IMG/VR virus record: IMGVR_UViG_3300032245_001860
Coordinates: 1 to 64,000 of that record
Reading direction: 5' to 3' (one strand)
Length of the DNA stretch: 64,000 bases
Of this stretch, positions 28,879 to 61,722 are shown piece by piece (position 1 is the first letter of the stretch; each line of letters starts with the position of its first letter). The notes under the pieces were generated by a model. That model was given only the letters and a program-made list of their open reading frames with translations, was not told the origin of the DNA and made no database searches. Made by a program: the position numbers and the translations under genes.

Positions 28879-30405
28879 TTAATTAATTTGATTACCATTT
28901 TCGTCTAATAATGGCAGGTTATATTTTGCTGCTAAATCTTCCGCAGACATTATTTGATCAAATTTTGTAGCAGATTCATTTCCATAACTTTTTACAATTG
29001 CTATAGGTTTCCAGTTTACTAAAACAAATTCATTAAATTCATCTTCAATAAAATCTTTTTCATCTACTATAAGAGGTAATCTATCTGTCCATCTCATTTG
29101 TCTTTGTCTTGGAGCAAAAACATATTGATTTGTTTGTAGGTCATGGTTTGCTGCTAATGTAACGTGTCCTTTTAGCATTATTCCAGCATTGCCCACCCAT
29201 CTATTTTTGTATGGTGGTTTTTTGTAAGCTATGCATGACATTTCTACATTTGACAGATTCATTCTTGGATCTAATTTTGAAGCTTGTCCATAATGTATAT
29301 ATGTAAGAGAGTTTAAGAATTCTCTATTAGCTTTTTGGTTCCATGTAGCTTTGATGTCATGCATTACATCTCTTTGATCTTCTACCATACCGGGTTGAAA
29401 TTTTTCATTCCATTCTTTTAATTTATCTTCACCGGCCCATTCTGCAGTGTTATCAGGTTGTTTAGTAGTGTTTTGTGTATCTGGTAGTGCAGCTATCTTG
29501 ATTTGATTTGTAATTTGATCAGCTAATTCTAACAATCCATTTTCATCTAAATTATTAGCTATTTTAATTAGTGATGCAATGATTTGTTTTTTCTTTATAT
29601 TTTTTGCAACTGAGGTTTTTTGTAAATTTTCTATTTCTTCTTCTGTTGGTGTTAGGTAATCTTTTAGTTCTTCGTGAGCATTTAATTTATCTTCATACCT
29701 TGGTTTATATGCTCTTTCTGCATCATAAATTTCTGTTTCATTTGTCCATTGTTGTTCAAGCCATTCGTTCATGGCTTGCACTTCGGATCTGAATTCTGTA
29801 GGTAATATTTCACTTATTTTGAGTAGTGCAGGAAGAACACGTCTTATATTAGTTTTATTTGTATCTCTATAAACACTTTTAAGTTTTTTGAATTCTCTTC
29901 TTAGTCTATATGTTAATGCAAACTCGCCTTTTTCAATCATTTCTTTGAATTGATCTTTGAGTCTTGTGTTGCCTTCTTTCTTGGTAAATATATAATCATG
30001 AAGAAGATTGACAAACTTTGGAGAATCGATTAGTAGGTCTTGAAAATCATTATTAATATGTCCAGTGCCTTCATAGTCTCTTATAACGTCTGCAAAGAAT
30101 TTATCAGGTGTCCAGTCAATTTTAGTTTCTGGAAAAAATGGTAATTTGACTTTTGGTAATGGTTTTCCATATCCTGCAACATCTTGGTATAGTGTTTCTA
30201 ATAAATTTTGTGGTGGTAATGGTTCTAAATAATTTCTTTTTAAGTCATAAGTTCCAGGATGGTCAAGTCTTTGTGGAGGTAAGTTGAGGATAGCAAGTCT
30301 TGTAGCAAGATTTTGTATTTCATCACTATATCTGTATTGTTCTTGTTGATCAAGAGTATCAGAAATATCATATAAATTAGCTATTACTTGTCTATTATTC
30401 ATCAT
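28879..30405 (-). CDS. Putative virion protein with two copies of the helical tag
   Basis: RQVIANLYDISDTLD and internal KQIIASLIKIANNLDENGLLELADQIT. Confidence 0.7.
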   Translation of the reverse strand: MMNNRQVIANLYDISDTLDQQEQYRYSDEIQNLATRLAILNLPPQRLDHPGTYDLKRNYLEPLPPQNLLETLYQDVAGYGKPLPKVKLPFFPETKIDWTPDKFFADVIRDYEGTGHINNDFQDLLIDSPKFVNLLHDYIFTKKEGNTRLKDQFKEMIEKGEFALTYRLRREFKKLKSVYRDTNKTNIRRVLPALLKISEILPTEFRSEVQAMNEWLEQQWTNETEIYDAERAYKPRYEDKLNAHEELKDYLTPTEEEIENLQKTSVAKNIKKKQIIASLIKIANNLDENGLLELADQITNQIKIAALPDTQNTTKQPDNTAEWAGEDKLKEWNEKFQPGMVEDQRDVMHDIKATWNQKANREFLNSLTYIHYGQASKLDPRMNLSNVEMSCIAYKKPPYKNRWVGNAGIMLKGHVTLAANHDLQTNQYVFAPRQRQMRWTDRLPLIVDEKDFIEDEFNEFVLVNWKPIAIVKSYGNESATKFDQIMSAEDLAAKYNLPLLDENGNQIN

Positions 30406-30806
30406 TGATCCAACTTATCGTCTAAATCTCTTGCGCTATCAAAATCCATATTTTCTACAAGTAATGAAGATATTTTGTTTCCAGCTTCTTGTAGATTTTG
30501 TATTAGATCTCTTCTATGATAATAAAACATAGAGTCATCAGGGCCTTCTTCATTTTCAAGCAATTCTGGTAATGAATTTGCGGTATTGATGATTGTTAGG
30601 ATTTGTGATTTTAGGTTATCTAAAATCACATCAACATTACTAAAATCTTGTTGTATTTCTGGTTTTTGATCACCTGGCATAATAATATCGTCAGGAGAAA
30701 CATCATAAGCTAATTTAGTAAGAGAATTAGCTTCTTTATAATAGCCAGAATTATCAAGTGTATTTGCTATTTTAATTAGTGATGATACTATTTGTTTATT
30801 ATTCAT
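30402..30806 (-). CDS. Putative virion protein with N-terminal helical tag
   Basis: MNNKQIVSSLIKIANTLDNSGYYKEANSLTKLA. Confidence 0.7.
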   Translation of the reverse strand: MNNKQIVSSLIKIANTLDNSGYYKEANSLTKLAYDVSPDDIIMPGDQKPEIQQDFSNVDVILDNLKSQILTIINTANSLPELLENEEGPDDSMFYYHRRDLIQNLQEAGNKISSLLVENMDFDSARDLDDKLDQ

Positions 30807-30860
30807 TTTATTATAGAAACAAGTGGTAAGTAAAATTACCACTTGTTTTTGTTATTTAAA

Positions 30861-31352
30861 TTATCTTAAAGAATTCATTATTTGATTTTTAATTTCTTCG
30901 TATCTATTTTTTTGTTCTCTATTCATTGTCATATTTTCTGCAACTAAATCATCTAAATCTCTGAACACATCTCCCATTTCTGAATGAGTTGGGTTATTGT
31001 AATCTTTGGAGTAATCTTCACGCAGTTTGTCAGCAGGATGATTTCCATGCATATCCATCATACTGCTAATTTCATCTAATCCATTTGAAAGATCCATAGT
31101 TGAATCATTTTCATCTTCGCCATATCCACAGTCAAAACATACACCATCTTCATCAAGATATTCACCACAATCTGGGCAGATACCATAATCTTCTGTGTTA
31201 TATTCATCGTCCTTAGCGATTCTTGACATCACTTTTGTCACTGTGTTGGCTTCTGTAAAAAGGCCAGTATTATCGAGTTCATTTGCGATCTTGTTTAAGG
31301 ATGCAACTATTTGTCTTTTGTTCATATTTTTTTCCTTTTGAGAGGGGTTCAT
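30861..31352 (-). CDS. Putative virion protein: helical tag plus Zn ribbon
   Basis: KRQIVASLNKIANELDNTGLFTEANTVT; CPDCG..CFDCG. Confidence 0.7.
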   Translation of the reverse strand: MNPSQKEKNMNKRQIVASLNKIANELDNTGLFTEANTVTKVMSRIAKDDEYNTEDYGICPDCGEYLDEDGVCFDCGYGEDENDSTMDLSNGLDEISSMMDMHGNHPADKLREDYSKDYNNPTHSEMGDVFRDLDDLVAENMTMNREQKNRYEEIKNQIMNSLR

Positions 31353-31779
31353 TATATTTTTACAATTATAGAAAAGTAATCCCTTTCTCTTTTATAATTA
31401 GGATATGTTTTTAATTTTTGGTGTTGAGTTTTTGACATATACATTTTTTGCTTACACTTCTGAAAATTTTGTAGCTTGGTTTTTGTATATTTTATGTTTA
31501 TGGATAAGTGGTTATTATTGTTGGAAGTATATTTTTGAGAAAGTGAAAACATATAGGTTGGCTTATGTATTTTTATCTAATATTATTTTTTCATTTATAT
31601 TAGTGTGTAAGCTTCTTGATATGTGGTACTCAAATTTATAAACATCTTGTATCAATTAGAACCGCCATTTATAGGCTAAATAGTGAAAAAAGTTGCGACG
31701 GATTGTAGATGACGCAGTAGATAAATAAAAAAGAGGGGCAAAAACCCCTCTTTTTTATTTATAGTATGCGGCAGATAGT

Positions 31780-33525: not shown

Positions 33526-33894
33526 ATGAAAGATGTAATTGCAAAGTTATTAAAAACTGCGAATGATTTAGATGCTATTGGTATGTTCAGTGATGCTAAT
33601 TCTTTAACAAGGTTAGCTTATGATTTTAACAATCCAGAAAAAGAAGAGATAGTGGATGATTCTTTTGTCAATGCGGATGAGCATGAAGAGTTGATGAGAG
33701 TATTAGATGAGATGTCTAACTCTGGCGAAATCGATGACACTCAAGTTCAGCATATTATGGAAATTATTCAAGAAGGCAATCCATCAGCTCATTCTTGGGA
33801 AAAAGAAGAGTTAGTAGATGATTCATTAGCTATGGATATGCCAGTAAAGCAATTTTCAGATAAGAAGAAAAATTACAGTATCAAGGTTTTATAA
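33526..33894 (+). CDS. Putative virion protein with N-terminal helical tag
   Basis: MKDVIAKLLKTANDLDAIGMFSDANSLTRLAY. Confidence 0.7.
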   Translation: MKDVIAKLLKTANDLDAIGMFSDANSLTRLAYDFNNPEKEEIVDDSFVNADEHEELMRVLDEMSNSGEIDDTQVQHIMEIIQEGNPSAHSWEKEELVDDSLAMDMPVKQFSDKKKNYSIKVL

Positions 33895-34139: not shown

Positions 34140-34140
34140 A

Positions 34141-37134
34141 ATGAAAAAATTAAGTTATAGAATTGTAATATCTGGTATCAAAGAAGATATTGAAGCGCTT
34201 TGCAAACATATTGGCTTTACTGATCCTGAATATATAAAAGTTGTTAGGCAAAAAGTTGATGACTACAAAGGTTATCAAGTTTTTGCTGCTTGGTTATATA
34301 TTAGGGATGTTGAACCTGAATCATATGTTGTTGCATTGAATAAATATGTTAAAGCCAGACAATTAGATCCTTCAAAAATAAAAGTCACTAAAGATGCTGT
34401 TTCTATTAATGACAATGTTTTTAAGGATAAAATTGAGCTTACTGAATATATCCATTCTACATTCCCCATTATGCAAGTTGAGCAAAAAAAAGATAATGAG
34501 GAAGTAAAAAGCGAAGATCCAGTAATTGTCAACAAAGATAATTCTATAAAAATATATGAAGTTAATAGTGCAGATGATGGTAGAAGATTAGTTGGTGATG
34601 ACACTTCTTGGTGTATTGGGTACAAAGGCCCAAGTAATATGTGGCAGGGTTATAGAGACACCAAAGAATCTTCATTTTTTATTGTTTTTGATAATAATCC
34701 TCCTACTCCTGATCAAAGAAAAGTTGCGATTGATTTTACTTTTAGAGGTGTAGAACTTACTGATATACCTAATCGCACAGGTACACAATTGACTAATGGT
34801 ATGGATTGGGATGCTTATTCTAATTATCTTAAAAGTAGAGGGATTAATTTAGAAGCAAAAAGAGTTAATCCTAATACTGGTCAAGAAGAAAAGATACTTC
34901 AAAATAAACCTGTATCTCCTGAAGAAAAAATTCAAAAAGCAACATTTTCTACTGTAAATATGACTTCTGCCAGAATATTAGAAAAAAATACTGTTATGTT
35001 ATGGCAGTCTGGTAAATGCGAAATATATACGGGTACTCTTAACAGAAATTTTTTAGTTGAGCACGTTTTTCCTAAAGACCCAAAACAAACTTATCTTCAA
35101 TATCCTGATGACCGCACTGATTTTTTGATTACTATTGACAATCCAGATGCTATTTATTACACAGCAAGATGGATGTCTCAAGGAAAACCATTTACAGATG
35201 AAATATTAACATTTCTTATGAAATCTGTTGGTGGTGAAGATGTTTTATCAAAATTCTTAAACTCTGGCGCTGAAGTTCAAGACTCTCAATACAAAATTAT
35301 AAGAGAAAATAAAAGCTTATGGAAAACATACATAAGAACACAAATAATTAAGGCTGAGCAAACTGGGTACTATACACTTCCTTTTGAATATTTCAAAGAC
35401 TTAATGAATTCTGGCAACGATAAACTGATTACATATTATTTATCACTTGGCCTTAATGCAAGCCGAGAATTTGATGTCAAATTATTAAGAGATGAATTTC
35501 CAAATTACCTAAAATTATTATTGATGAGTTCGATGGGAGAAAATAAATCAAATCAATTTGCTCCATCAGTGCAACAAATAATAGTTGATACAAAAGATAA
35601 AGAAATTATTCAAAAATTTGTTCAAGTAGCAACAAATGTAACACCAGATATTGCCTCACAAATACAATCTGATCCAGAATTGTTTTTATTTTATAGTAAA
35701 GCTAATTTGGCGAAACCAGGCAGGAATGCATTTTTTGGTGAATTGGGCAATAAAATGGTTGATGCTGTTTTGAGATCTGGTGATAGAGAAGCAGTAAAAA
35801 AGGCAGCTCTTGGTAGGGGCTTTGAATATCGTGATTTTGCCCTGGCTAAAGAAATGGGTGTTTATGATGAAGCAAAGTTATCCATTTTAAATCCTAATAC
35901 TGTTGATCCAGATATATATCAATTATATGATCCTTCCAATCCTTATGATGTGTCATTAGTAGAGCAAATTCAAGATGTAAATGTTTTATCTTATTTGCAT
36001 CCTGAGTGGAGATCAAATTCAAAAGTTTCGATGGCTAATGCAATAATTAATTTTGAAAATAGACCTCATTCTCAAGAAAAACCAATACCTGATTCTGTTT
36101 ATGAACTAATGTTATATTTGATCAATGACAGTGATTATATGGCTTTTATAAGTCAATATGAATTAAGCGAAAGTGAACAAAATAAACTCAAATCTCTTTA
36201 TTCAGAATTGCAAAATTCATTAAAAAATCCAGAATTTGTAAAAACCTTTTTTACCAATTTCCAATTGATTAAGGGCAATACTCCTGGAATCAGTAGAATG
36301 TTTTCAATGATATATAATAATGTATCCGATGTTTTAAATATTCTACCGAGTGAAGCTTTATCAATTCCAGAAGTAAAAGAATATATTGAAGAGTATATAG
36401 AAGATATTAAATTTGAAAGTCTTTTAAAACATATTGATGTACCTTGGTTGTATGAAGAATTTGTGGAAAGTTGCGCTAAAGACCAAGACTTCTTAAGGCA
36501 AAAATTTAATGATTTTTACAATAAAGACAAAGAATTTGCTTTCCATTTTTTAGGTGATTGTTTTGAAAAACAAAAACCAGATTTAGGTTATTTTATTGCT
36601 ATTCCAGTGAACGTAAAAATTAAGGTAGCTTCTATTTATTTTGAAATTTATCCTGACGAAAAAGAAAGTGAAGAGACCTTAAAAAATAATTTTTTTGATT
36701 CTTTACTGATGAATAAAGGAAATAGAAGTTCTATCACTGAACAGCTTTACATATTAAGAAATTTTCCTAAATTATTCTATTATAAAATAGTACATGGTCT
36801 TCTTATGTTAAGATACATTTATCCAGAAATAAGATCTGCATTAAGACAAATGTATCCTAATATAGCCAATTTAATTCTTCAATATGAAACTGAAACAAAA
36901 TATGGAAGTGATTATTTTGATGAAAATACTGAAGAAGTAATGAGAGGGAAAAGACCAGATGAAGTTGAACCAGAACAACAAGATACATTCTATGATGGTC
37001 CCTCTGAAGAAGATTGGCCAAAGCAAGCTTCAATAAAACTTATGGTAAAAGTTGCCCAAAAACTTGATTTAAAAAAGAAATATAAGTTAGCAGATAAGTT
37101 TACAAATATATTGAGAAAATACAATGTTCAATAA
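34141..37134 (+). CDS. Large paralogous protein 1 (TxWCI domain, C-terminal tag)
   Basis: GDDTSWCIGYKGPSNMW..Y; C-terminal MVKVAQKLDLKKKYKLADKFT. Confidence 0.8.
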   Translation: MKKLSYRIVISGIKEDIEALCKHIGFTDPEYIKVVRQKVDDYKGYQVFAAWLYIRDVEPESYVVALNKYVKARQLDPSKIKVTKDAVSINDNVFKDKIELTEYIHSTFPIMQVEQKKDNEEVKSEDPVIVNKDNSIKIYEVNSADDGRRLVGDDTSWCIGYKGPSNMWQGYRDTKESSFFIVFDNNPPTPDQRKVAIDFTFRGVELTDIPNRTGTQLTNGMDWDAYSNYLKSRGINLEAKRVNPNTGQEEKILQNKPVSPEEKIQKATFSTVNMTSARILEKNTVMLWQSGKCEIYTGTLNRNFLVEHVFPKDPKQTYLQYPDDRTDFLITIDNPDAIYYTARWMSQGKPFTDEILTFLMKSVGGEDVLSKFLNSGAEVQDSQYKIIRENKSLWKTYIRTQIIKAEQTGYYTLPFEYFKDLMNSGNDKLITYYLSLGLNASREFDVKLLRDEFPNYLKLLLMSSMGENKSNQFAPSVQQIIVDTKDKEIIQKFVQVATNVTPDIASQIQSDPELFLFYSKANLAKPGRNAFFGELGNKMVDAVLRSGDREAVKKAALGRGFEYRDFALAKEMGVYDEAKLSILNPNTVDPDIYQLYDPSNPYDVSLVEQIQDVNVLSYLHPEWRSNSKVSMANAIINFENRPHSQEKPIPDSVYELMLYLINDSDYMAFISQYELSESEQNKLKSLYSELQNSLKNPEFVKTFFTNFQLIKGNTPGISRMFSMIYNNVSDVLNILPSEALSIPEVKEYIEEYIEDIKFESLLKHIDVPWLYEEFVESCAKDQDFLRQKFNDFYNKDKEFAFHFLGDCFEKQKPDLGYFIAIPVNVKIKVASIYFEIYPDEKESEETLKNNFFDSLLMNKGNRSSITEQLYILRNFPKLFYYKIVHGLLMLRYIYPEIRSALRQMYPNIANLILQYETETKYGSDYFDENTEEVMRGKRPDEVEPEQQDTFYDGPSEEDWPKQASIKLMVKVAQKLDLKKKYKLADKFTNILRKYNVQ

Positions 37135-39853
37135 TCGTATAGTAGTTGCGCAAGCTGAATTATTAAGACAAATCTTTCTTGCCAAAGAAAAAGATTATAG
37201 TGAGTTTAGAGATTTAGTTCAATCATATCAAGGCCCATATAAACTTTTGTCTGCTTGGTTATTTGCAAGAGATTTTCAAAAACCTCAAGTGGATGATATT
37301 GTTAGACATTTAGATCCATATATCAGAAAAGGTCATTTGAAGCCTGGTGAAATAAATGTTTCACCTAATGCAGTAAAAATCAGAGACAGTCAAGCTTTTG
37401 AGGAAATAGTTCCTTTCACAGATTATATTCATGCGCAATTTCCAGTAGCAACAAAAGAATCTAAAGAACCTGTAAAACAACAAGTTGAAGATATTCCTGT
37501 AGCCACCGGAGATGGAATAAAAATATATCAAATCAATAGTGCAGATGATGGAAGAAGATTAGTTGGCGGCGATACAAAATGGTGTATTGGTTATCCTGGT
37601 CCTAATAATATGTGGCCTCATTATAGACAAAATCAAGCTTCCACATTTTTTGTTGTATATGATGAAAATCCTCCAACTTCTGATCAAAGAAAAGTAGCTA
37701 TTGATTTTACTAAAAATGATATTCTATTAACAGATATACCTAACACAACTGGACATCAATTGTCTAATGGTATGGACTGGGAAGATTATTCTAAATATCT
37801 TATGAAAAAGGGCGTAAATTTAGATGCTACAAGAATAAACCCTGAAACCAATGAAGAAGAAAAGATTTTTCAAAATAAACCAGTTACACCACAAGAAAAA
37901 TTAGTAACTACTTTATTTAATTTGACAAGAAATCAAAGTAAATATCAACCCAATTTAGGTCTTACTCCAGAAGATATAAAAATGTGGTCTACTGGTAAGT
38001 TTCAAATAAGATCTGATATGGAAAACCAAACTGTCATTCAAGCAGATGATAATGATCCAAATTATTTTTATTTTAGAAAAAATTCCAGATCAACTCCAAT
38101 AAATCTTCCAACAGAAGAAGAAATTCCTGGCATAAGCATTTCAAAAGAGCCTATGGATAATCCTTCAGGTGATGGAAGAACCCTATATAGTTCTATCACC
38201 ATAAATACAGATGAAACAAAAACATTTCTATCAAAATTTATTGGTATGGGATGGATTTTACCAGATCCAATATTTGATTATGTTATTGATTTACCTGATG
38301 GCAAAGATATCATAATTCAATATATAGACACAGGATTAAAACTTCCAAAACAGCAACTGGACAAAATAAAAAATGTACCAAGTTTCATAAAAAGCTATGT
38401 TCGTAAACAACTTCAAGCTGTAGAAAGAGCTGGTTCTACAGATTTAGAATTTTTAGAATTTGCAGATCCAAATGACCTAAAAATCAGAAATCAAGTTTTA
38501 GACGCACTTTATTCAAGATATGAAAATCAATCATATGACGATATGAATATTTTCTTTGAAAATACTCCATTAGAATGGTACAAAATACCTCAAATAGGTT
38601 TATTCTTAACAGATAAAACTGATTATATTGATTTCAATGATGAGTTAGCTATAAAAGTTGCCCTTGCTAAAGGTATGTGGTTTTATCTTAATGAAAATCC
38701 AACACTTGAAAATGCTCTAATATATTTGCATGATTTAAATGCTATAAATTCATTTAAAGACAAAGCAATAGCAGAAAAATATCATCCAACATTTTTTGAA
38801 GCTCCTTATTTTTTAGGAGTATGGAAAAAATTGTGGGATAAAGTTCCTGATTCTTTAAAAAAACTTCCTGAACTAAATCAATATAAAGCAGTGGGTGAAT
38901 TTGAACCATATGGTGGTTTACATCTTGAGCAACCATATCCCGGCGATGACATTGAATTATTATATGAAACAGCTGCAATTAATATTTTGGCTGGTAATGC
39001 ACAAAGAACTTATTTATATAAAAATAAACCTGAATTTTGGATGTATTTAATAAAGAATTTTAACAAATTGATGGAAGGTGTTTTCAGGAATATTAATTAT
39101 ATAACTCTTGAATCTGAAACTGATGAAGATGGCAATGATACTGAAACTAAAACTTATAGTAGACATGATCAAAGAGAAAAATTTTTAAAGTATTTTTCTT
39201 ATGCTTTGTCAACTAATATTTTAAGTAATCCTGAAATCATATCAGCTATAAAAGACAATTTTAAGGAAAATGAAACAGATTATATATTATCTGGTTTTAT
39301 GAATGTTCCACAAGTATTAGATTATTTCGTTGAAAAAATAAATACTTTTTCAGATGCATATCAAATAGCTGATTTTAGGTTTTCAAATTTATTTATGAAA
39401 GAAAACCCTATTTTAAGAAAAATTACACAAAATGGTTTTGATGTTGATAATTTCTTAAATGTTACATTTCAGCCTTTGCATCTTATTTATAATGCATACA
39501 AATGGTATCCAGAAATAATTGATAAGATTAGCGATGAAGGTTTCCTTAAAATTTTAAAATCTCCAAGAGACAGTACTATTGCAAGAGAATATTTCAGTTT
39601 CTTGCTTGAAAAAAGACCTAATGTTATATGGACTTTATTTGAAGAAGGTTCAAGAATATTTACCTACGAGCAAAGAGTTTTCCTGACACAAAAGAAAAAA
39701 GAAATGTCTCAACAACCACAAGAACCAATTGAAGAAGAACCTACTACAGCTTTTGTAAAATCAATAGTGAAGGTGGCTAATAAACTTGACAGCAAAAATA
39801 AATACAAGTTAGCGGACAAGTTTACAAATATCTTGAGAAAATACAATGTTTAA
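37124..39853 (+). CDS. Large paralogous protein 2
   Basis: GGDTKWCIGYPGPNNMW..Y; C-terminal IVKVANKLDSKNKYKLADKFT. Confidence 0.8.
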   Translation: MFNNRIVVAQAELLRQIFLAKEKDYSEFRDLVQSYQGPYKLLSAWLFARDFQKPQVDDIVRHLDPYIRKGHLKPGEINVSPNAVKIRDSQAFEEIVPFTDYIHAQFPVATKESKEPVKQQVEDIPVATGDGIKIYQINSADDGRRLVGGDTKWCIGYPGPNNMWPHYRQNQASTFFVVYDENPPTSDQRKVAIDFTKNDILLTDIPNTTGHQLSNGMDWEDYSKYLMKKGVNLDATRINPETNEEEKIFQNKPVTPQEKLVTTLFNLTRNQSKYQPNLGLTPEDIKMWSTGKFQIRSDMENQTVIQADDNDPNYFYFRKNSRSTPINLPTEEEIPGISISKEPMDNPSGDGRTLYSSITINTDETKTFLSKFIGMGWILPDPIFDYVIDLPDGKDIIIQYIDTGLKLPKQQLDKIKNVPSFIKSYVRKQLQAVERAGSTDLEFLEFADPNDLKIRNQVLDALYSRYENQSYDDMNIFFENTPLEWYKIPQIGLFLTDKTDYIDFNDELAIKVALAKGMWFYLNENPTLENALIYLHDLNAINSFKDKAIAEKYHPTFFEAPYFLGVWKKLWDKVPDSLKKLPELNQYKAVGEFEPYGGLHLEQPYPGDDIELLYETAAINILAGNAQRTYLYKNKPEFWMYLIKNFNKLMEGVFRNINYITLESETDEDGNDTETKTYSRHDQREKFLKYFSYALSTNILSNPEIISAIKDNFKENETDYILSGFMNVPQVLDYFVEKINTFSDAYQIADFRFSNLFMKENPILRKITQNGFDVDNFLNVTFQPLHLIYNAYKWYPEIIDKISDEGFLKILKSPRDSTIAREYFSFLLEKRPNVIWTLFEEGSRIFTYEQRVFLTQKKKEMSQQPQEPIEEEPTTAFVKSIVKVANKLDSKNKYKLADKFTNILRKYNV

Positions 39854-42563
39854 TTATCGCATAGTAGTAGCAAATAAAGATTTATTCATTTCAATCTTTA
39901 GATCTGTTGGTAAAGATTACAACAACTATAAAGAAACAATTAATAACTATAATTCTGTTTTCAAATCTATTGCTGCTTGGATGCTTGCAAGAGACTCCAA
40001 TGAATTTGCAATTAACGATATAGTTAGCCATCTTACCGAATATATAAATCGTAAAAAATTAAACCCTGCTAATATCAAAGTATCTATAGCTAATATTGTA
40101 ATTAATGACAAATCTATTCCTGATTTAGAAGAATTATTCAACTATGTCCATGCCACCTTTCCAATAGTAAAGAAACAAGAAGAACAACCAGCTGAAGAAA
40201 TAATAGAACGTACTCCTATTCTCACTGGCGATGGAATACAGATATTCAAAGTAGATAGGGCTCAAGATAGTAAAGAACTTGCAGCTGATACTTCTTGGTG
40301 CATAGCTTATAAAGGCCCAAATAATATGTGGCAAAGCTATAGGAGTAACCAAGCTGCTACTTTCTTCATTGTATGGGATGAAAATCCACCAACACCTAAT
40401 CAAAGAAAAGTGGCTTTGCAATATAATAAAAATAATGTCCAAATCACTGATATTGTAAACAGAACAGGTTTTAATTTAACTAACGACATTACTTTTGAAT
40501 ATCAAGGACAAACTATTACAGGCAGAGATATACCTACTTATCTTACATATTTGAAAAGTAAGGGAGTGGATATTGATGCCACAACTATTAACCCTGAAAC
40601 TGGCCAAGAAGAAAAAATACTTAAAAACAAACCTATCACTCCTGAAGAAGCAATGGAGACAGAGATTGGCGCATATGTAAGATATAATTCTTCAGATATT
40701 AGTGTTGATAATATTAAAAGTTGGGCTACAGGAGAGTTTACTCTTACCATTCCTCAAGGTTTCATCAACAAAGTCCGTGATGGAGAATATCAAGTTTTTA
40801 CTAAAGATAATTACTCTGGAAGAAGTTTTAAAGTTCCTTATGATTTTGTAACTGAAGAAATACCATTTGATGATCACCCCCGGAACGCTTTACCTTTGCC
40901 ATTAAAATCCGTCACTTTTGAATCAGAAAATATAAAAACATACCTTGCCAAATTCATCGGAATGGGATGGATTATGTCTGATGAAATTGTAGATTATTTG
41001 ATGGAAGTTCCTGGTGGTAAAGATTACTTAATTCAATATGTAAATACTGGCTTACAATTACCTAAAAGTCAAGTTGATAAATTAAGCACTAATAAACAAC
41101 TTTTTAATTCCTATTTGAAACAACAACTGACAGCATTCGAATTAGGGCACAACAATGGAGAGTTTTTACAATATATTGATACTGATAATGAAGAAGTAAA
41201 AAATAAAATTCTTGAAAGATATAAGAAAAATTCATTTATCAATATTCCCTTAAAATGGCTTAAAGTATTACCACAAATAGGTGTTTTTAAGTTTACAGGT
41301 CCTAACTTTGATTTTGGAGATGAATTTATAAATCAATTGGCTATTTCTCATGGTAATACTGACATTTATGAACAATTTCCAACTCTTGAAAATACAAAAA
41401 TTTTACTTCAATTTCCTGAAGCAATTGATAAACTAAAACCAAGAGCTGAAGCAGAAGGATATTCTTCAAATGTATTTAGTGAGATTGATCAATTAAGTGA
41501 TTGGACTGTTAGATGGAAATCCGTGCCAGAAATATTTCACGACAATCCTGAATTTCAAATATATAAATCCGCTGCTTTAGCTGGTCAAAATTCATATGAC
41601 AGAATGGATCTCAAGAAACACGAAGGTAATAATCCAGATGATTTCTTATATTACACAATTCTTTTGATGAATGATGAAATACAACATGAAGAAAAAAATT
41701 CTCCGATAATCAAAAACCCTGAATTTTGGAAATTTGCAATTAATAACTTTGATCATTTGATAGATACAGTATTTAAAAAAATCAAAATATGGCATAGAGA
41801 TTTACCTGATAATTTTGATGAAGATAATGATGACGAAGAAAATTTTGATGAAATAGAAGACAAAGATAAACAAAGGGTAGAACTTGCTGGTTTCTTAAAA
41901 AATATGCCACCTGAAATATTCTTCTCCCCTGAAATGGTTGAATTGATCAAGAGCAAGTTTGACCTTGAAATAATAAACAATGCATTAGTAAACTATTTGC
42001 AAAAAGGTTGGAATCTTGACGCATTTTCAGCATACATAAAAGATTTTGCTGATTTAGCTCAGTTTTCTAATTATGGATTTATATTTTTTACTCATCCAAA
42101 TAATTTAATTAAAACATTAGTGAGAGATCATTACGATGAACAAAAATTCTTATATGCTTTGAGTAATTTAGCTGGCTTTAAATCAAGTGTTTTTGTAGAA
42201 CTTACTAAATGGCTTCCAGAATTATTTCTAAAAGTATCTGATGAAGCAATATTGAAAATGCTTACCAATATTCGTGGCACAATACCAAGAGAATTTTTAG
42301 ATCATATCTTAGAATATAAACCAGATTTCATAAAAAAATATTCTGATCGATTAATACCTAAAATGCATTCACAAGATGTATGGTATTATCTTACTGAAGA
42401 ATTGAGAAAACAACAAGAAGAAGCAGATAAAACAATTGAAGAAGAAGATAAGTTTGCTTCTGTAAAAATTATGGTGAAAGTGGCACAAAAGCTTGATATT
42501 AAAAAGAAATATGAGTTAGCAGATAAACTAACTCATATTCTAAAGGTAAAAACCTCTCAATAG
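39846..42563 (+). CDS. Large paralogous protein 3
   Basis: ADTSWCIAYKGPNNMW..Y; C-terminal MVKVAQKLDIKKKYELADKLT. Confidence 0.8.
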   Translation: MFNYRIVVANKDLFISIFRSVGKDYNNYKETINNYNSVFKSIAAWMLARDSNEFAINDIVSHLTEYINRKKLNPANIKVSIANIVINDKSIPDLEELFNYVHATFPIVKKQEEQPAEEIIERTPILTGDGIQIFKVDRAQDSKELAADTSWCIAYKGPNNMWQSYRSNQAATFFIVWDENPPTPNQRKVALQYNKNNVQITDIVNRTGFNLTNDITFEYQGQTITGRDIPTYLTYLKSKGVDIDATTINPETGQEEKILKNKPITPEEAMETEIGAYVRYNSSDISVDNIKSWATGEFTLTIPQGFINKVRDGEYQVFTKDNYSGRSFKVPYDFVTEEIPFDDHPRNALPLPLKSVTFESENIKTYLAKFIGMGWIMSDEIVDYLMEVPGGKDYLIQYVNTGLQLPKSQVDKLSTNKQLFNSYLKQQLTAFELGHNNGEFLQYIDTDNEEVKNKILERYKKNSFINIPLKWLKVLPQIGVFKFTGPNFDFGDEFINQLAISHGNTDIYEQFPTLENTKILLQFPEAIDKLKPRAEAEGYSSNVFSEIDQLSDWTVRWKSVPEIFHDNPEFQIYKSAALAGQNSYDRMDLKKHEGNNPDDFLYYTILLMNDEIQHEEKNSPIIKNPEFWKFAINNFDHLIDTVFKKIKIWHRDLPDNFDEDNDDEENFDEIEDKDKQRVELAGFLKNMPPEIFFSPEMVELIKSKFDLEIINNALVNYLQKGWNLDAFSAYIKDFADLAQFSNYGFIFFTHPNNLIKTLVRDHYDEQKFLYALSNLAGFKSSVFVELTKWLPELFLKVSDEAILKMLTNIRGTIPREFLDHILEYKPDFIKKYSDRLIPKMHSQDVWYYLTEELRKQQEEADKTIEEEDKFASVKIMVKVAQKLDIKKKYELADKLTHILKVKTSQ

Positions 42564-42975: not shown

Positions 42976-43938
42976 TTAATCAATATTTTCAGCTACAAGT
43001 TCAGCTCTATTTGTCCAGCCTTTTCCATATATATCTGCTTGTTCATCAGATTTATACCTATGGATCTGTGCATCAAGAATTTGCTTCGTAAATGTTTTAT
43101 CATCTTTTTTGCATTTTGACCAGATAGCAGCAAGAGTTTTAGGACCCATAAAACCAGTTTGTTCAATATTTAATAATCTTTGAACAAATCTAATTGAATC
43201 TTGTGGGCCATCAGTTAAAGCCATTGACATCATAGCTTTAGCAACATTATGAGGAAGTTGATCACCTTTTATCACTCCCCAAAATAATTTTCTATAAATT
43301 TTCAATGCTCTTGTCTTTGATATCTTAAAGACATCAGAAGACTTGATTTTGTTCTGTTTTGCCCAATCATTATATGTTCTTTGGGTGATGCCAAAATTAG
43401 TTCTACCGCCTCTATCTGATTTTTCATCAGTTTTTCCACCTTCAAGATTTAACATCAACTTCATTGTTTCGTCAAAATTGCCTTTAGGTAACTGTGAAGC
43501 TTTGAATGGTTCAGGTTTTTTTACTTCTTGCTCTTTTACAGGTTCAAATTTAGGTCTTGGAGCAGGTTGAACTCTTCTGCGTAATCTTTTTTGAACAGGT
43601 TTTTCTACTGGGGTTTCAATTTGTTTTGGAGCTGGTTTTGCTTGTGGCTTGACATATGTATCTTCAACAAATTCAGAATCTTCCCCATATTGATCCATGA
43701 AAGCTTGTTGGTCCATCATTCTTTGTTCAGCAGCAGGAGGTTTAGTTGGTAAAGGACTGACAACATTCCCTAAAGTTCCAATACCAACTGCTAATGGAAG
43801 TGCTTTTAAGAAATCAACAGGTCTGAAAGTTTTTTCGCCAGCTAATTTTATAAGTTGATCAAGATTGTCTGCTGTTTGAAAATCTCCAATATCATCGTAG
43901 ATTCTTGCAGCAATTCTTATATTATTTACAGAGGTCAT
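42976..43938 (-). CDS. Glycoside hydrolase family 108 lysozyme with N-terminal tag and hydrophobic segment
   Basis: LEGG..D..SDRGGRTNFGITQ; C-terminal peptidoglycan-binding G.MGPKTL and YGKGWTNR. Confidence 0.88.
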   Translation of the reverse strand: MTSVNNIRIAARIYDDIGDFQTADNLDQLIKLAGEKTFRPVDFLKALPLAVGIGTLGNVVSPLPTKPPAAEQRMMDQQAFMDQYGEDSEFVEDTYVKPQAKPAPKQIETPVEKPVQKRLRRRVQPAPRPKFEPVKEQEVKKPEPFKASQLPKGNFDETMKLMLNLEGGKTDEKSDRGGRTNFGITQRTYNDWAKQNKIKSSDVFKISKTRALKIYRKLFWGVIKGDQLPHNVAKAMMSMALTDGPQDSIRFVQRLLNIEQTGFMGPKTLAAIWSKCKKDDKTFTKQILDAQIHRYKSDEQADIYGKGWTNRAELVAENID

Positions 43939-45868: not shown

Positions 45869-45871
45869 AGT

Positions 45872-48097: not shown

Positions 48098-48216
48098 ACA
48101 AATAAAGAGTGGAAAAATCTTCCACTCTTTATTATTTAACATTCACTTAACATAACTTGTTAATAAATACATAATAATAATTGTGTTTGCAGACTTTTCT
48201 TTCAAAGGTTTATAAA

Positions 48217-52830: not shown

Positions 52831-53671
52831 CATTTTGATGCAAGGTAGATTTCATGACTACACTTTTGATTTTGCATACGATTATGCTGATTTAGATTAC
52901 GTTAATAAAGTAATTATTTCTACTTGGAAAAATCATAATGAACCATTTACCTGGCTTGAATCACATCCTAAGATAGAATATGTATTTTCTGAAGATGTTG
53001 ACTTTGCTGCAGACAACAGAAATAGACAAATTTATAGCACTCTTGCTGGATTAAGGAAATGTAAATCTGAGTTTACATTGAAAACAAGGACAGACCAATT
53101 CATATACCTTAAGTGTATTGACAAACTTGTAGATTTTTATGACAAACATAAAGAACCAGTGATGCACTATCACGACAATCCCTCTATGCCTCACAATAGA
53201 ATGTGCGTAGCTGGGATGTATAAAACTTATCCTTATTGTCCAAGAGACCACTTTATGTTAGGTAATACAAAAGACTTAATTGAATTCTTTGATATCCCTT
53301 TAGATTATCAATTCCAATTTACCCCAGAGAGACAAAAAGAATTTAATGAAAAAGGAAGAGTAATGCTTGAAGACTTCGAGTGGAACACAAGATGTGAAGT
53401 CTATATGGGCGCTTGGTATTGTGCAAAATTTGACAAAAGGGTATATAATCATTTATGGAATTATAAAAAATATCTTACAGATTTAGCTCCTAACTTGCAT
53501 GAGTCAATAGATCTATCAAAAGAAATAGTTACCAAAATCATGAAACCATTTCCAAGACAAGGCGTAGACTTTATGTGGCCATCGCACGGAATCAAAAATT
53601 ATTATTATGATTATCAAGCTGAACATGGTCAATTTTGGGCAGAAGATGATTCTGAATGGAACAAAGATTAA
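52820..53671 (+). CDS. WavE-like LPS synthesis protein
   Basis: ILMQG, IISTW, NRNRQIYSTLAGL, KTRTD and RDHFMLG motifs. Confidence 0.78.
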   Translation: MKIDILMQGRFHDYTFDFAYDYADLDYVNKVIISTWKNHNEPFTWLESHPKIEYVFSEDVDFAADNRNRQIYSTLAGLRKCKSEFTLKTRTDQFIYLKCIDKLVDFYDKHKEPVMHYHDNPSMPHNRMCVAGMYKTYPYCPRDHFMLGNTKDLIEFFDIPLDYQFQFTPERQKEFNEKGRVMLEDFEWNTRCEVYMGAWYCAKFDKRVYNHLWNYKKYLTDLAPNLHESIDLSKEIVTKIMKPFPRQGVDFMWPSHGIKNYYYDYQAEHGQFWAEDDSEWNKD

Positions 53672-54891: not shown

Positions 54892-54892
54892 T

Positions 54893-55513
54893 ATGAAGAA
54901 TGTATTTTATGATGGTGATGGTCCTGTTGGTGAATACTTGAGGAACAATTATTTTTTAGATTATGATTACAAAGGTATTTTGCTTGAAGTAGGTGGGGGA
55001 CATCCAGAACAGTATTCATTTTCTAAACATTTTATTGACAATGGCTGGAGAGGTATTATTTTCGAACCAAATCCAAAATATGCTCAAATGCATAGAGAAT
55101 TGGGAAATGAAATTTATCAAGTAGCAGTTTCGACCAAAGATGAAGAAAATGTAGATTTTCAAATATTAACAAAATTTGGTGATTTTGAAATGTCTGGTAG
55201 TGCGTTAAGTGTCAAATATCAAAATGAATTTTCACCAGGTACAACAGTAAGTTCAATCAAGGTTGATGTAATAACACTAAATTCTTTTTTTGAAAAAAAT
55301 AATCTAAAAGAAGTTGACATTATCTCAGTTGACACCGAAGGATGGGAATTAGAAGTCATGGAAGGCTTTGATACATCTAAATATTATTCAAGATTTGTTG
55401 TCTTGGAAAATTTGAAATATAGTCCAAAGTATAATAAATTTATGAGAGAAAAAGGATATAAACTCCTTACAAATTTGGGTATTAACTATATTTACGAATT
55501 TGTAAAAAAATAA
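54893..55513 (+). CDS. FkbM-family methyltransferase
   Basis: EVGG, GWRGIIFEPNP and SVDTEGWELEV motifs. Confidence 0.85.
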   Translation: MKNVFYDGDGPVGEYLRNNYFLDYDYKGILLEVGGGHPEQYSFSKHFIDNGWRGIIFEPNPKYAQMHRELGNEIYQVAVSTKDEENVDFQILTKFGDFEMSGSALSVKYQNEFSPGTTVSSIKVDVITLNSFFEKNNLKEVDIISVDTEGWELEVMEGFDTSKYYSRFVVLENLKYSPKYNKFMREKGYKLLTNLGINYIYEFVKK

Positions 55514-56670: not shown

Positions 56671-56679
56671 ATAAATACT

Positions 56680-57456: not shown

Positions 57457-57472
57457 TTGTACAATTGCCTTT

Positions 57473-58195: not shown

Positions 58196-58227
58196 TTGTT
58201 TGAAACCTTAATTGTACAAAAGACTTT

Positions 58228-59210: not shown

Positions 59211-59288
59211 TTAAAAAAGCCCTATCCATTTTAGGATAGGGCTTCTGTGCTCTATTTATATAATACAATATTTGAAGAAAAGTTCCTA

Positions 59289-60053: not shown

Positions 60054-60137
60054 AGTTGCTATTATACCATAAGAAGGTTCAATATTTTTAATTGTAGAAA
60101 AAGAATGTAACTGTTTTTCAGATAAGGATTTTTTATC

Positions 60138-61436
60138 ATGGATAGAGATGAACTTGATATTTATTTAGAGCTCGCCAATGAAGCTGAAAATGCTGGCGAT
60201 TATAGAACTGCTGACAAAATTGATGGCATGATTAGAGAAGCGCAAGCTGGCGTAATGGAAAGATTGAGAAGAAGACTCAGAAATACCAAACTCCCAAGTG
60301 AAAGACGTGAGCTTGAAAGACAAATTCGCCAAACAACAAATGGACCTTCCTTTGTTGATAGATTTATGAGAAGACAACCGTCATTTTCTGATGCACAAGC
60401 AACAATTGATGCTGGACAAAACATAAGTGGTGGATTTGAAAAGAAAAATCTTAATATGGATAAATCTTTGCTTGGAAGATTAAGAAATGCTTTTCAATCA
60501 GTTTATTCTCAAGAAATGAAATTGAGAGATCAGTTTCCACAAGCTTTTGAAGCCTGGGATGCTGACATCCGAAGACAAGTCCAGACACAAATTAATGATG
60601 AGATTGCAAAAAGAACACAACATAATGATGCATTAGCTGCTTGGAGAGCTGCAAACCCTGGCAAAGGAGCAACAGCAGCAAATGGCTGGGTTTCTCCTGT
60701 ACCTGCGTATGGGAGCAAAAATAATACTTTTAATTTATCTCCAACTACAGTTGAAGAATATCTAACAAGAAAAAGTATGCTTTCTAAAATAGACGATCCG
60801 AATAATCCATTAGTTACATTAAGAGATGCCCATCTTGATACAATTCAACGTGCAATTGGTCTTGCAAGAGCTGCTGGACACTCAACTCCAAGAGATATTC
60901 TTGCATTTATAGCCTCCGATAGGCAGCTTAGAGGTTTTCTATACGATAACTCTTCTATTACAGATGGTATGGTTAAGGAAGTTATCAGAACTAATTCTCT
61001 TCCAATGAGTGAATTCTGCAATAACTACAAGGCATTCAAGAAAAGAATGTCTCCTGGTGCAGCTTGGTTAATTGGAGCTGCAGTCGCTGGCGGAGTTACA
61101 ACTATAATAAGACCTAAGGGCGAAGATAAAGTTGTTTATGTTCCAGTACCTGGCAAACCTGAAGCCTTAAAGATTGATAATGAATTGGAAGCTGACAGAA
61201 GGAAAGCAAGACAGTTTGACACTCCTATTGCAGATCTTGAAGCATATCTTAATTTTAAGAAATCCAAGGGTGTTTACACACAAGGCAAAACTACTAAGAA
61301 AGAGCTTTACAATATGGCACTTCAAGAAAAGGGTGGGCACTTTGCAAACAACTTAATTCAATATGTATTGAAAAAATATGGATTGTATACACCTGCAGGT
61401 GGTGGAGCCGAGCCAGACGCAGCAATTGGAGTATAA
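60138..61436 (+). CDS. Putative virion protein with N-terminal tag and one TM segment
   Basis: LELANEAENAGDYRTADKID..IREAQ; AAWLIGAAVAGGVTTII. Confidence 0.65.
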   Translation: MDRDELDIYLELANEAENAGDYRTADKIDGMIREAQAGVMERLRRRLRNTKLPSERRELERQIRQTTNGPSFVDRFMRRQPSFSDAQATIDAGQNISGGFEKKNLNMDKSLLGRLRNAFQSVYSQEMKLRDQFPQAFEAWDADIRRQVQTQINDEIAKRTQHNDALAAWRAANPGKGATAANGWVSPVPAYGSKNNTFNLSPTTVEEYLTRKSMLSKIDDPNNPLVTLRDAHLDTIQRAIGLARAAGHSTPRDILAFIASDRQLRGFLYDNSSITDGMVKEVIRTNSLPMSEFCNNYKAFKKRMSPGAAWLIGAAVAGGVTTIIRPKGEDKVVYVPVPGKPEALKIDNELEADRRKARQFDTPIADLEAYLNFKKSKGVYTQGKTTKKELYNMALQEKGGHFANNLIQYVLKKYGLYTPAGGGAEPDAAIGV

Positions 61437-61464
61437 CAAAAAACCCCTCAAAAGAGGGGTTTTT

Positions 61465-61722
61465 TTATTTAACTTGTGAAATCTTTAAAAATATTTCATG
61501 TAAAGTTGAAGCTTCTTTTTCAAAACCTTTTTCTTCAAGAGCTGTGATAACTTTATTAAGTTCATTCAAGCTCTTCTTTTTTCTTTTCTTAGTCTTTTTC
61601 TTTTTGAATTTTGACCAAGCTATTGCCCAAGCAATTGATTCTTTTTGTTTATCGCTTTTGTCAGGATAAAATTCAGGATCAGCAATTAAGGCATCATGTA
61701 TTTCGTCAACTTTCTTTGGCAT
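61465..61722 (-). CDS. Small basic protein with C-terminal tag
   Basis: MPKKV..AWAIAWS; LNKVITALEEKGFEKEASTL. Confidence 0.6.
   Translation of the reverse strand: MPKKVDEIHDALIADPEFYPDKSDKQKESIAWAIAWSKFKKKKTKKRKKKSLNELNKVITALEEKGFEKEASTLHEIFLKISQVK

What the first reader, a model, noticed from the sequence alone, without database searches (positions are those of the whole stretch)
28879..61722. Portable ~30-aa helical tag on at least ten proteins
Seen: consensus (I/L)xKxANxLDxxGxxxxA(D/N)x(L/I)T, often followed by [RK]xA. It is N-terminal in 28879, 30402, 30861, 33526, 42976 (lysozyme) and 60138, internal in 28879, and C-terminal in 34141, 37124, 39846 and 61465. It is absent from the early region. 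Inference: a capsid-targeting or scaffold-docking signal for loading injected cargo, with [RK]xA as a prohead-protease site, analogous to the T4 capsid-targeting sequence.
Basis: partly seen in the sequence, partly recalled or inferred. Interest (0 to 1): 0.72.

Follow-up and report, generated by a model that had tools for sequence, protein, structure and literature searches.

The report
Portable two-helix tag in huge phage
About twenty otherwise unrelated proteins of an uncultured 316-kb marine phage carry the same ~35-residue two-helix tag at one end; it is an undescribed docking module, possibly a signal that loads proteins into the virion, but its partner is still unknown.

Summary
The window is the first 64 kb of a 316-kb uncultured huge phage. 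A profile built only from other genomes finds 19 tag copies (E<0.01) in this genome's ORFs, and none in reversed or shuffled ORFs. Three (lysozyme 42976, 60138, 61465) are weak but plausible. About twelve more tagged genes lie outside the window.

- **Position:** 19 of 21 copies are terminal, against 3.1 expected. None lies in the 66-gene early region.
- **Conservation:** it is at protein level, because paralogous tags are only 35-63% identical in DNA.
- **Spread:** 845 protein clusters in public metagenomes carry the tag, and the top hits fall into 92 unrelated protein groups. No Pfam, PHROG or PDB family matches, and no GenBank phage carries it.
- **Fold:** two helices joined by a short turn, resembling a single TPR repeat.

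My best reading is a shared docking module, most likely a virion-loading signal like the T4 capsid-targeting sequence (confidence about 0.4). [KR]-hydrophobic-A is a conserved end of the tag, but cleavage there is unproven. An MCP-tag co-fold gave no answer. Tags are nearly absent next to the major capsid gene, and sister clades lack them. Self-association and a non-capsid hub remain live rivals.

The parts
30861..31352 (-). Small tagged protein. The tag is MNKRQIVASLNKIANELDNTGLFTEANTVTKVMSRIA, encoded at 31212-31325. Translation probably starts at the ATG at 31325, not 31352. An acidic linker and a Cys-rich zinc-ribbon-like segment follow.
   Evidence: iE 3e-20 with a profile free of this genome's sequences. 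AF2 gives two helices at residues 3-20 and 23-40. Orthologues are 72-82% identical in IMG/VR contigs.
30402..30842 (-). Small tagged protein. The tag is encoded at 30693-30806, and the likely start is the ATG at 30806. Its second helix is one turn shorter and ends in KLA.
   Evidence: iE 1e-16. Sequence shown.
28879..30405 (-). 508-aa protein with a degenerate N-terminal tag (30289-30402) and a strong internal tag (29485-29598). It is a fusion of two tag-led units.
   Evidence: iE 5e-6 and 4e-13. In relative L030 the C-terminal half is a separate ORF that begins with the tag.
33526..33894 (+). 122-aa acidic protein with an N-terminal tag (33526-33633).
   Evidence: iE 4e-10. Orthologues occur in L028 and L030.
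34141..37134 (+). 997-aa protein, first of three tandem paralogues. The C-terminal tag (37015-37128) follows an acidic linker.
   Evidence: iE 3e-10. Paralogy was shown with phmmer, E 1e-92. No Pfam or PHROG family matches.
37124..39853 (+). 909-aa paralogue with a C-terminal tag (39740-39850) that ends at the stop codon.
   Evidence: iE 9e-13.
39846..42563 (+). 905-aa paralogue with a C-terminal tag (42444-42557).
   Evidence: iE 1e-7.
42976..43938 (-). GH108 lysozyme with a PG_binding_3 domain. It carries a degenerate N-terminal tag (43831-43932), then a Gly/Ala-rich hydrophobic stretch and a Pro/Lys-rich linker.
   Evidence: Pfam PF05838 at 1e-20. The tag is not significant alone (iE 1.2), but orthologues in G003 and G004 carry clear N-terminal tags.
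60138..61436 (+). 432-aa basic protein with a weak N-terminal tag (60144-60257) and one hydrophobic segment near residue 307.
   Evidence: iE 0.003.
61465..61722 (-). 85-aa protein with a weak C-terminal tag (61468-61581) after a poly-Lys linker.
   Evidence: iE 0.03. Sequence shown.
1..26100 (.). Tag-free early region. It holds about 17 units, each a GC-rich hairpin followed by TGTCAAATAAA, TTGCA (-35) and a TATAAT-like -10, in front of small ORFs.
   Evidence: k-mer enrichment and motif listing. 0 of 66 genes tagged, p=0.006.

Best explanation
The motif is a self-contained docking module of about 35 residues. It consists of helix 1, a turn ending in Gly, and helix 2, and it resembles a single TPR repeat.

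- The phage fuses it, through a flexible and usually acidic linker, to either end of about 7% of its proteins.
- The carriers are mostly lineage-specific ORFans encoded in variable tandem arrays. They also include two peptidoglycan hydrolases and three ~900-aa paralogues.
- All copies are kept alike by selection on the protein, which implies that they all fit one shared partner.
- The most likely partner is a component of the assembling head. On that reading the tag would act like the T4 capsid-targeting sequence or an encapsulin or scaffold-type cargo-loading peptide. It would load accessory proteins into the virion for delivery with the DNA.

Shown: the module, its portability, its terminal position, its protein-level conservation, its exclusion from the early region, and its restriction to certain lineages. 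Inferred: that it binds a common partner. Speculative: that the partner is in the prohead, and that N-terminal tags are cut off after [KR]-hydrophobic-A.
For: **Reality and portability**
- 19 copies in this genome with a profile free of its sequences, against 0 in reversed or shuffled ORFs.
- 845 protein clusters among 1.84 billion representatives.
- After masking the tag, 142 top hits fall into 92 unrelated groups. They carry almost no known domains.

**Selection on the protein**
- Paralogous tags are 35-63% identical in DNA, with many synonymous differences.
- Positions 1-37 carry 2-4.3 bits of information each, then conservation drops sharply.
- Orthologous families (lysozyme, 124170, 229886, 302607) keep a tag at the same end in genomes whose MCP is 76-91% identical, although the tag sequence itself has drifted.

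**Terminal bias and timing**
- 19 of 21 copies are terminal, and none lies in the 66-gene early region.
- That early region carries sigma-70-like promoters.

**Fold**
- Two helices.

**Link to the head**
- The arrays of tag-led ORFs hold 3-4 genes here and 5-7 in close relatives. This matches the T4 internal-protein loci, which share only a CTS (PMC3012670).
- A GH108 lysozyme and a glucosaminidase are tagged.
- The tagged gene 124170 is syntenic inside the TerL-portal-protease-MCP block in three genomes.
- In the distant contig L032, a 3-tag protein and a 1-tag protein lie between the prohead protease and the MCP.
- A prohead protease is present.
Against: - There is no direct evidence of any partner. 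The MCP+tag co-fold scored 0.00, which the tool reports as 'no answer'.
- Within 10 kb of the MCP gene in 80 related contigs (1.4 Mb) only one contig has tags. The core head proteins, including the scaffold-like ones, therefore lack the tag.
- Eleven relatives with 54-65% identical MCP have no tags. Three of them were checked and share the portal and protease families: G005 by BLASTP, and G013 and G016 at their MCP loci. The receptor therefore cannot simply be a conserved core head surface.
- C-terminal, internal and multiple copies do not fit a T4-type cleavable N-terminal propeptide.
- [KR]-hydrophobic-A lies inside the predicted helix 2, and P1' is not conserved.
- The tagged gene 229886 lies directly upstream of the topoisomerase genes.
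- The L032 tagged protein has an AP2 domain. It may therefore be a mobile-element gene inserted in the head block.
- The phage is uncultured, so no virion proteome exists.
Confidence: 0.4

Rival explanations
1. The tag is a self-associating module. Single TPR-like hairpins pair or stack with each other, so tagged proteins form homo- or hetero-oligomers. Proteins with several tags would act as cross-linkers, for example in an intracellular assembly or condensate. No separate receptor is needed.
For: - The tag resembles one TPR repeat. Eight of the top 150 profile hits are TPR_10/12-type arrays with NNLAxxLDxQGKYxEAE.
- 33 of the top 150 hits have 2-3 copies, sometimes adjacent (P0114, P0094).
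- The natural two-tag protein P0114 folds as four helices with pLDDT about 80.
- No tag-specific receptor emerged.
- The patchy phyletic distribution is easier to explain for a self-sufficient module.
Against: - Nearly every position is conserved, including polar surface positions (N11, N15, D18, E25, N27, T30). That is more than a simple hydrophobic dimer interface needs.
- Promiscuous cross-association of 20 unrelated proteins, including lytic enzymes, has no obvious benefit.
Confidence: 0.25
2. The tag docks on a hub that is not the head. Candidates are a tail or baseplate component, a membrane or envelope complex, a chaperone or export machine, or a host protein. It would then set location or timing inside the infected cell rather than packaging.
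For: - Several tagged proteins have a Gly/Ala-rich hydrophobic stretch just after the tag (lysozyme 42976, 301321, 301864). Two are cell-wall hydrolases.
- Tags are depleted around the MCP gene.
- Tagged genes cluster beside the fibre/virion-structural blocks at 245-307 kb.
- One tagged gene sits beside the topoisomerase genes.
Against: - None of the 142 top tagged proteins has a strong transmembrane segment.
- No hub candidate was identified.
- The array architecture and the head-block copies fit the virion-cargo model better.
Confidence: 0.2
3. The tag is a small nucleic-acid-binding helix-extension-helix motif (SAP/HeH-like) that tethers proteins to phage DNA.
For: - Its length and its helix-Gly-helix layout resemble SAP/HeH motifs (my own recollection of those families).
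- The copies in this genome are basic: about +3 for N-terminal tags and up to +8 for the C-terminal tags of the three paralogues. Poly-Lys linkers precede two copies.
Against: - Net charge is not conserved across the family. The L032 type is about +1 and the P0004 type about -2.
- No Pfam SAP, HeH or Rho_N hit appeared at E<0.1.
- The profile recovers TPR arrays, not SAP proteins.
Confidence: 0.05
4. The pattern is a chance similarity, low-complexity sequence or a DNA-level repeat with no function at the protein level.
For: The genome is AT-rich (33% GC), and Lys/Asn/Ile-rich helices are common in it.
Against: - E-values reach 1e-20, with 0 hits in reversed or shuffled ORFs.
- DNA identity between copies is low while the protein is conserved.
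- The tag is conserved at the same terminus in orthologues.
- 845 clusters carry it elsewhere.
Confidence: 0.01

Closest known systems
T4 capsid-targeting sequence (CTS) of the internal proteins IPI-III and Alt
   Same: It is the only conserved element on an otherwise highly diverse set of accessory or defence proteins, which are encoded in variable loci. It is portable and N-terminal, and it works with a prohead protease (PMC3012670, PMC5694885). The phage here also encodes a prohead protease.
   Different: - The T4 CTS is 10-20 residues, strictly N-terminal and removed by cleavage after Glu.
- The tag here is about 35 residues and forms a folded two-helix hairpin.
- It also occurs at C-termini, internally and in several copies.
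- No sequence similarity exists.
- Cleavage and encapsidation are untested.
Long N-terminal propeptides of ejection proteins in phiKZ/SPN3US-type giant phages
   Same: They occur in giant phages, on many inner-head or ejection proteins, and paralogues with diverged bodies keep conserved N-termini (PMC5694885).
   Different: Those propeptides are 80-160 residues and family-specific. They are cut at S/A/G-X-E motifs. The phage here belongs to an unrelated lineage: its TerL is at most about 26% identical to any GenBank phage.
Scaffolding-protein coat-binding helix-turn-helix (P22 gp8 type) and encapsulin cargo-loading peptides
   Same: They are short terminal elements on a flexible linker that bind the inner face of an HK97-fold shell. 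They can carry foreign cargo and work at a C-terminus (my own knowledge of those systems).
   Different: Here the scaffold-position proteins lack the tag. No MCP binding could be shown. There is no sequence or fold match in PDB.
Tetratricopeptide repeat (TPR_10/TPR_12 type)
   Same: It has the same length and the same register of small and large residues: L-N-x-[IL]-A-x-x-L-x-x-x-G-x-Y-x-E-A. TPR arrays are the only non-phage hits of the profile. One of 142 tagged proteins hits Pfam TPR_8.
   Different: - The tag is solitary, not in arrays of three or more.
- Each TPR repeat scores only 12-22 bits, against 45-60 bits for true tags.
- Pfam TPR models do not hit this genome.
- D18 and T30 are tag-specific.

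Membership tests
T4-type capsid-targeting sequence | Short (10-20 aa) strictly N-terminal propeptide | tested here: not met
   The tag is about 35-37 aa. Five of 21 copies are C-terminal and two are internal.
T4-type capsid-targeting sequence | Sole conserved element on otherwise unrelated accessory proteins in variable loci | tested here: met
   92 unrelated groups among 142 tagged proteins. Arrays hold 3-7 tag-led ORFs and differ between close relatives.
T4-type capsid-targeting sequence | Removed by the prohead protease at a defined site | not testable with these tools
   A prohead protease domain exists and [KR]-hydrophobic-A ends the tag, but there is no proteome for this uncultured phage.
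T4-type capsid-targeting sequence | Necessary and sufficient for encapsidation | not testable with these tools
   This needs a packaging assay. The only in-silico attempt (MCP+tag) gave no answer.
Tetratricopeptide repeat proteins | Match to curated TPR models | tested here: not met
   No TPR family at E<0.1 on the ten window proteins. PF13424 finds nothing in the genome at E<=10. One of 142 relatives hits TPR_8 at 2e-4.
Tetratricopeptide repeat proteins | Tandem array of three or more repeats forming a superhelix | tested here: not met
   103 of the top 150 hits have a single N-terminal copy. Where there are several copies they are usually about 200 aa apart.
Tetratricopeptide repeat proteins | 34-aa helix-turn-helix with the TPR residue register | tested here: inconclusive
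   AF2 gives two helices at pLDDT 60-75. The profile cross-hits TPR_10/12 arrays at 12-22 bits per repeat. There is no significant PDB or Foldseek match.
Scaffolding-protein coat-binding domain | Carried by the scaffolding protein encoded between portal/protease and MCP | tested here: not met
   The protease-fusion (133072), the acidic protein (137421) and 139052 have no tag. Only 1 of 80 MCP loci has a tag within 10 kb. The exception is the distant contig L032.
Scaffolding-protein coat-binding domain | Binds the major capsid protein | tested here: inconclusive
   The co-fold of the MCP (alignment A4) with the tag (A1) scored 0.00. The tool states that this is no evidence either way.

The most novel reading that the evidence does not exclude
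This lineage of huge marine phages has a natural, modular cargo-loading system. One 35-residue hairpin, usable at either end of a protein, loads more than 20 different proteins into the capsid. The cargo would include cell-wall hydrolases, three ~900-aa paralogues and fast-turning arrays of small effectors. The variable tag-led arrays would then be an injected anti-defence or take-over arsenal, the functional equivalent of the T4 internal proteins but built on an unrelated, folded tag.
Probability: 0.35. Interest if true: 0.85.

Novelty: new variant of a known kind. Interest (0 to 1): 0.64.

Why it matters
If the tag is a loading or docking signal, it labels a whole set of proteins (about 7% of the genome, and at least 845 protein clusters in metagenomes) that share a destination. 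That would turn hundreds of 'hypothetical' ORFans of uncultured huge phages into a defined class that can be tested. It would also give a compact natural tag, working at either terminus, for loading foreign proteins into large capsids. Even if the destination is not the head, it is an undescribed domain family under strong constraint, and one pull-down could identify its single partner. Tag-led arrays would also mark the fast-evolving accessory loci of these phages.

Tried and rejected
- **Family and structure searches on the tagged proteins.** Pfam and PHROGs return only the two hydrolase domains. The tag profile has no significant match among PDB sequences. Foldseek of the two-tag model gave nothing below E=1. 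ESM Atlas look-ups of 137421 and 37124 gave no usable lead.
- **GenBank phages.** There was no DNA match, no match to the tag, and no match to 28879 or 137421.
- **Finding the MCP.** PF05065, PF07068, PF03864, PF09950 and PF20036 all failed. It was found through homology to contig L032 and phrog_2522. I first guessed 137421 (it is a hyper-acidic zinc-ribbon protein) and then 122962 (it is a UDP-galactopyranose mutase).
- **Co-fold of MCP and tag.** It gave no answer.
- **Phyletic profiling for a receptor.** I compared G003 and G004 (tag-positive) with G005 (tag-negative). It was too coarse: 74 genes share the pattern, and G005 shares only about 25 genes with this genome.
- **Contexts of distant multi-tag proteins.** Most lie on contigs under 6 kb.
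- **pI of tagged against untagged proteins.** No difference.
- **Late-promoter motif shared by tagged and structural genes.** None was convincing by eye.
- **DNA-repeat or gene-conversion origin.** Rejected on low nucleotide identity.
- **TPR arrays as a hub in this genome.** None exist.

Full report
**What the window is**

The window is the first 64 kb of a single 315,852-bp contig (33% GC) that IMG/VR holds as a linear virus record, estimated 88% complete. It is a tailed phage.
- Identified genes outside the window are a large terminase (119776-121893), a portal (130575-132917), a DNA polymerase and both topoisomerase II subunits.
- A 1405-aa protein (133072-137289) carries a head-maturation protease domain at residues 52-244.
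- The major capsid protein is at 139757-140611 (phrog_2522, E 5e-67).
- There is no DNA match in GenBank phages. The terminase is at most about 26% identical to any deposited phage; the best hit is an uncultured 485-kb phage.
- The MCP family is large. 346 IMG/VR contigs encode a relative, on contigs estimated complete from about 83 kb up to 548 kb.

Yes.
- A strict regex finds seven copies at the stated genes.
- An iterated HMM on all 1346 ORFs of the genome reaches 15 proteins at domain E below 1e-4.
- To avoid circularity I built a profile from 205 tags taken only from other sources. It finds 19 domains at iE<0.01 in this genome. Reversed ORFs and three shuffles each give none.
60138 (iE 0.003) and 61465 (iE 0.03) are weak.
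- The lysozyme 42976 is not significant alone. Its orthologues in two related genomes do carry clear tags at the same end.
Further tagged genes lie at 70264, 124170, 229886, 239438, 245695, 248233, 298044, 301321, 301864, 302607, 306576 and perhaps 304170.
- The total is about 22 of 329 genes.

**Anatomy of the tag**

- In 94 proteins from other phages that begin with the tag, every one of positions 1-37 carries 1.5-4.3 bits of information (32 of the 37 carry 2.4 bits or more). The consensus is MNKRQIIASLNKIANELDNSGLYKEANSVTKVMKRLA.
- Position 35 is R/K (98%), position 36 is L/I/V (99%) and position 37 is A/S (96%). Information then falls below 1.4 bits, and Asp/Glu dominate the next dozen positions.
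- Across the wider family the near-invariant residues are A14, L17, D18 and A26, together with G21, D/N27 and T30.
- AlphaFold2 with 85 sequences gives two helices, at residues 3-20 and 23-40, at moderate confidence (pLDDT about 60-75).
- A natural protein with two adjacent tags (P0114) gives four helices at pLDDT about 80.
- 19 of 21 copies in this genome start within 16 residues of the N-terminus or end within 8 residues of the C-terminus, against 3.1 expected.
- The one strong internal copy, in 28879, is a gene fusion. In relative L030 the C-terminal half is a separate ORF that starts with the tag.

**The conservation is at protein level**

- Tag-coding DNA of paralogues in the window is only 35-63% identical, with many synonymous differences at conserved residues. 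The pattern is therefore not a DNA repeat or recent gene conversion.
- Four orthologous families keep a tag at the same terminus in genomes G003 and G004, whose MCPs are 91% and 76% identical. These families are the lysozyme, 124170, 229886 and 302607.
- In those orthologues the tag sequence has drifted, yet [KR]-hydrophobic-[A/S] still ends every N-terminal copy.

**Portability and spread**

- The 15-tag profile, run against 1.84 billion representative proteins, finds 845 at E<=0.001.
- Of the best 150 hits, 103 have one N-terminal copy, 8 have a C-terminal copy and 33 have two or three copies.
- Eight of the 150 are eukaryote-type NLR/TPR arrays whose repeats read NNLAxxLDxQGKYxEAE. Each repeat scores only 12-22 bits.
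- With the tags masked, the other 142 proteins fall into 92 groups that are unrelated by BLASTP.
- Pfam recognises almost nothing in them: FHA twice, and AP2, ferritin-like and a few others once each.
- Every source is a metagenome, and every name given is 'hypothetical' or a likely mis-annotation. One source contig comes from a Tara Oceans sample.
- No Pfam, PHROG or PDB family matches the tag, and tblastn finds it in no GenBank phage.

**Distribution among relatives**

| Genome | MCP identity to this phage | Tag matches |
|---|---|---|
| G001 | 98% | 22 |
| G002 | 96% | 7 |
| G003 | 91% | 13-15 |
| G004 | 76% | 5 |
| G012 (fragment) | 75% | 1 |
| Eleven records, G005-G011 and G013-G016 (83-548 kb) | 54-65% | 0 |

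The tag reappears in a distant contig, L032, whose MCP is only 39% identical. It is therefore a lineage-restricted system with a patchy wider distribution.

**Where the tagged genes sit**

- None lies in the first 26-28 kb of the window. That region is a typical early region. It holds about 17 repeats of a GC-rich hairpin followed by TGTCAAATAAA, a TTGCA -35 and a TATAAT-like -10, each in front of small ORFs. 0 of its 66 genes are tagged (p=0.006).
- In the window, three tag-led ORFs are in tandem (30861, 30402, 28879) opposite a fourth (33526) and the three large paralogues.
- The matching loci of close relatives hold five to seven tag-led ORFs. [quoted passage not shown]
- Two cell-wall hydrolases are tagged: GH108 lysozyme 42976 and glucosaminidase 239438. 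No clear holin flanks the lysozyme.
- The tagged gene 124170 is syntenic inside the TerL-to-MCP block in G000, G003 and G004. It is missing from the tag-free G005.
- In L032 a one-tag protein and a three-tag protein lie between the protease-fusion and the MCP. The three-tag protein has an AP2 domain, and the neighbouring portal shows a faint LAGLIDADG signal. Mobile-element insertion is therefore an alternative reading of that locus.

**Evidence that cuts against a simple capsid or scaffold docking model**

- Within 10 kb of the MCP gene in 80 relatives (1.4 Mb) only one contig has tags. A uniform density like that of G000 would give roughly 90.
- The proteins in the scaffold position lack the tag: the C-terminal 1150 aa of the protease-fusion, the hyper-acidic zinc-ribbon protein 137421, and 139052.
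- Sister clades with the same capsid gene families have no tag.
- The single complex prediction, MCP alignment A4 with tag alignment A1, scored 0.00. The tool itself says this is no evidence either way.
- 229886 is co-oriented directly upstream of the topoisomerase genes.
- [KR]-hydrophobic-A lies within the predicted second helix and has no conserved P1' residue. C-terminal tags end at the equivalent position, at the stop codon. The motif may therefore simply be the end of the fold.
- One observation mildly favours a role of its own for the motif. Two window tags (30402 and 33526) have a second helix one turn shorter yet keep K/R-L-A at the junction.

**Interpretation**

What is shown is a folded, portable, terminal module under strong protein-level constraint, carried on many unrelated non-early proteins. 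The simplest inference is one shared binding partner.
- I rank virion loading first (about 0.4). The reasons are the T4-like gene logic, the tagged hydrolases, the head-block copies and the presence of a prohead protease.
- Self-association of TPR-like hairpins comes second (about 0.25), and a non-head hub third (about 0.2).
- A DNA-binding role is unlikely, because net charge is not conserved.
- Chance is excluded.

**Comparison with known systems**

The tag works most like the T4 CTS in logic, but it fails the defining features of that family (short, strictly N-terminal). It looks most like one TPR repeat, but it fails TPR membership (no model hit, no array). It is not the scaffold's coat-binding domain in this genome. 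I therefore file it as a new variant of a known kind, the portable targeting or docking tag, and as an undescribed domain family.

Noticed in passing
window 1-26100: There are about 17 near-identical regulatory units. Each is a GC-rich hairpin (GGGGTG...CACCCC) followed within about 10 nt by TGTCAAATAAA, a TTGCA -35 and a TATAAT-like -10, in front of small ORFs on both strands. This looks like a battery of strong host-type early promoters, each preceded by a terminator.
   Followed up: partly
window 48181-49116 (+): The protein has a prepilin-type N-terminal methylation motif plus DUF1559 (SBP_bac_10). That combination is typical of Planctomycetota-type pilin-like proteins and may be a clue to the host.
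   Followed up: no
window 49963-55513 (+) and G000 122962-124083: A sugar-nucleotide and modification cluster holds a nucleotide-sugar epimerase, methyltransferases and a HAD/PNK-like protein. A UDP-galactopyranose mutase sits between the terminase and portal genes. Together these suggest glycan or DNA-sugar modification.
   Followed up: no
window 44135-47680 (-), 56-1045 (+), 1234-3219 (+): There are two PcfJ-like proteins, a DUF932 protein and a GHKL-ATPase (HATPase_c_3) protein. These families are better known from conjugative elements.
   Followed up: no
window 61724-62626 (-): A NUDIX domain is fused to the HAD domain of 'Swiss army knife' RNA-repair proteins, directly beside the weakly tagged 61465.
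   Followed up: no
G000 133072-139022: The prohead protease domain is fused to about 1150 further residues that include two zinc-ribbon motifs. It is followed by a 533-aa protein with a long Asp/Glu run and another zinc ribbon. This is an unusual candidate scaffold pair. G003 and G004 share the acidic protein, but the tag-free G005 has no detectable homologue.
   Followed up: partly
loci L039-L118 (IMG/VR): One MCP family (54-100% identical) spans contigs rated complete at 83-97 kb and at 461-548 kb. Capsid-gene kinship therefore crosses a six-fold range of genome size.
   Followed up: no
G000 302607-303173 (L023:18607-19173): The C-terminal domain of this tagged protein (RRKNFRARHNCDNPGP..YWSC.MW) occurs without the tag in Pelagibacter, Roseobacter and Synechococcus phages and in Nitrosopumilaceae spindle-shaped viruses. 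It is annotated 'HVA1 family' or hypothetical.
   Followed up: partly
G000 139757-140611 vs 140385-141434: The MCP ORF overlaps the mechanically called start of the next ORF by 226 nt. The PHROG match of that next ORF begins at residue 110, so its true start is probably downstream.
   Followed up: no
window 42576-42938 (-): The small protein just downstream of the tagged lysozyme has a signal-peptide or lipobox-like N-terminus (MKTLMIGLLAVCSLN). It could be a spanin-like or periplasmic partner.
   Followed up: no
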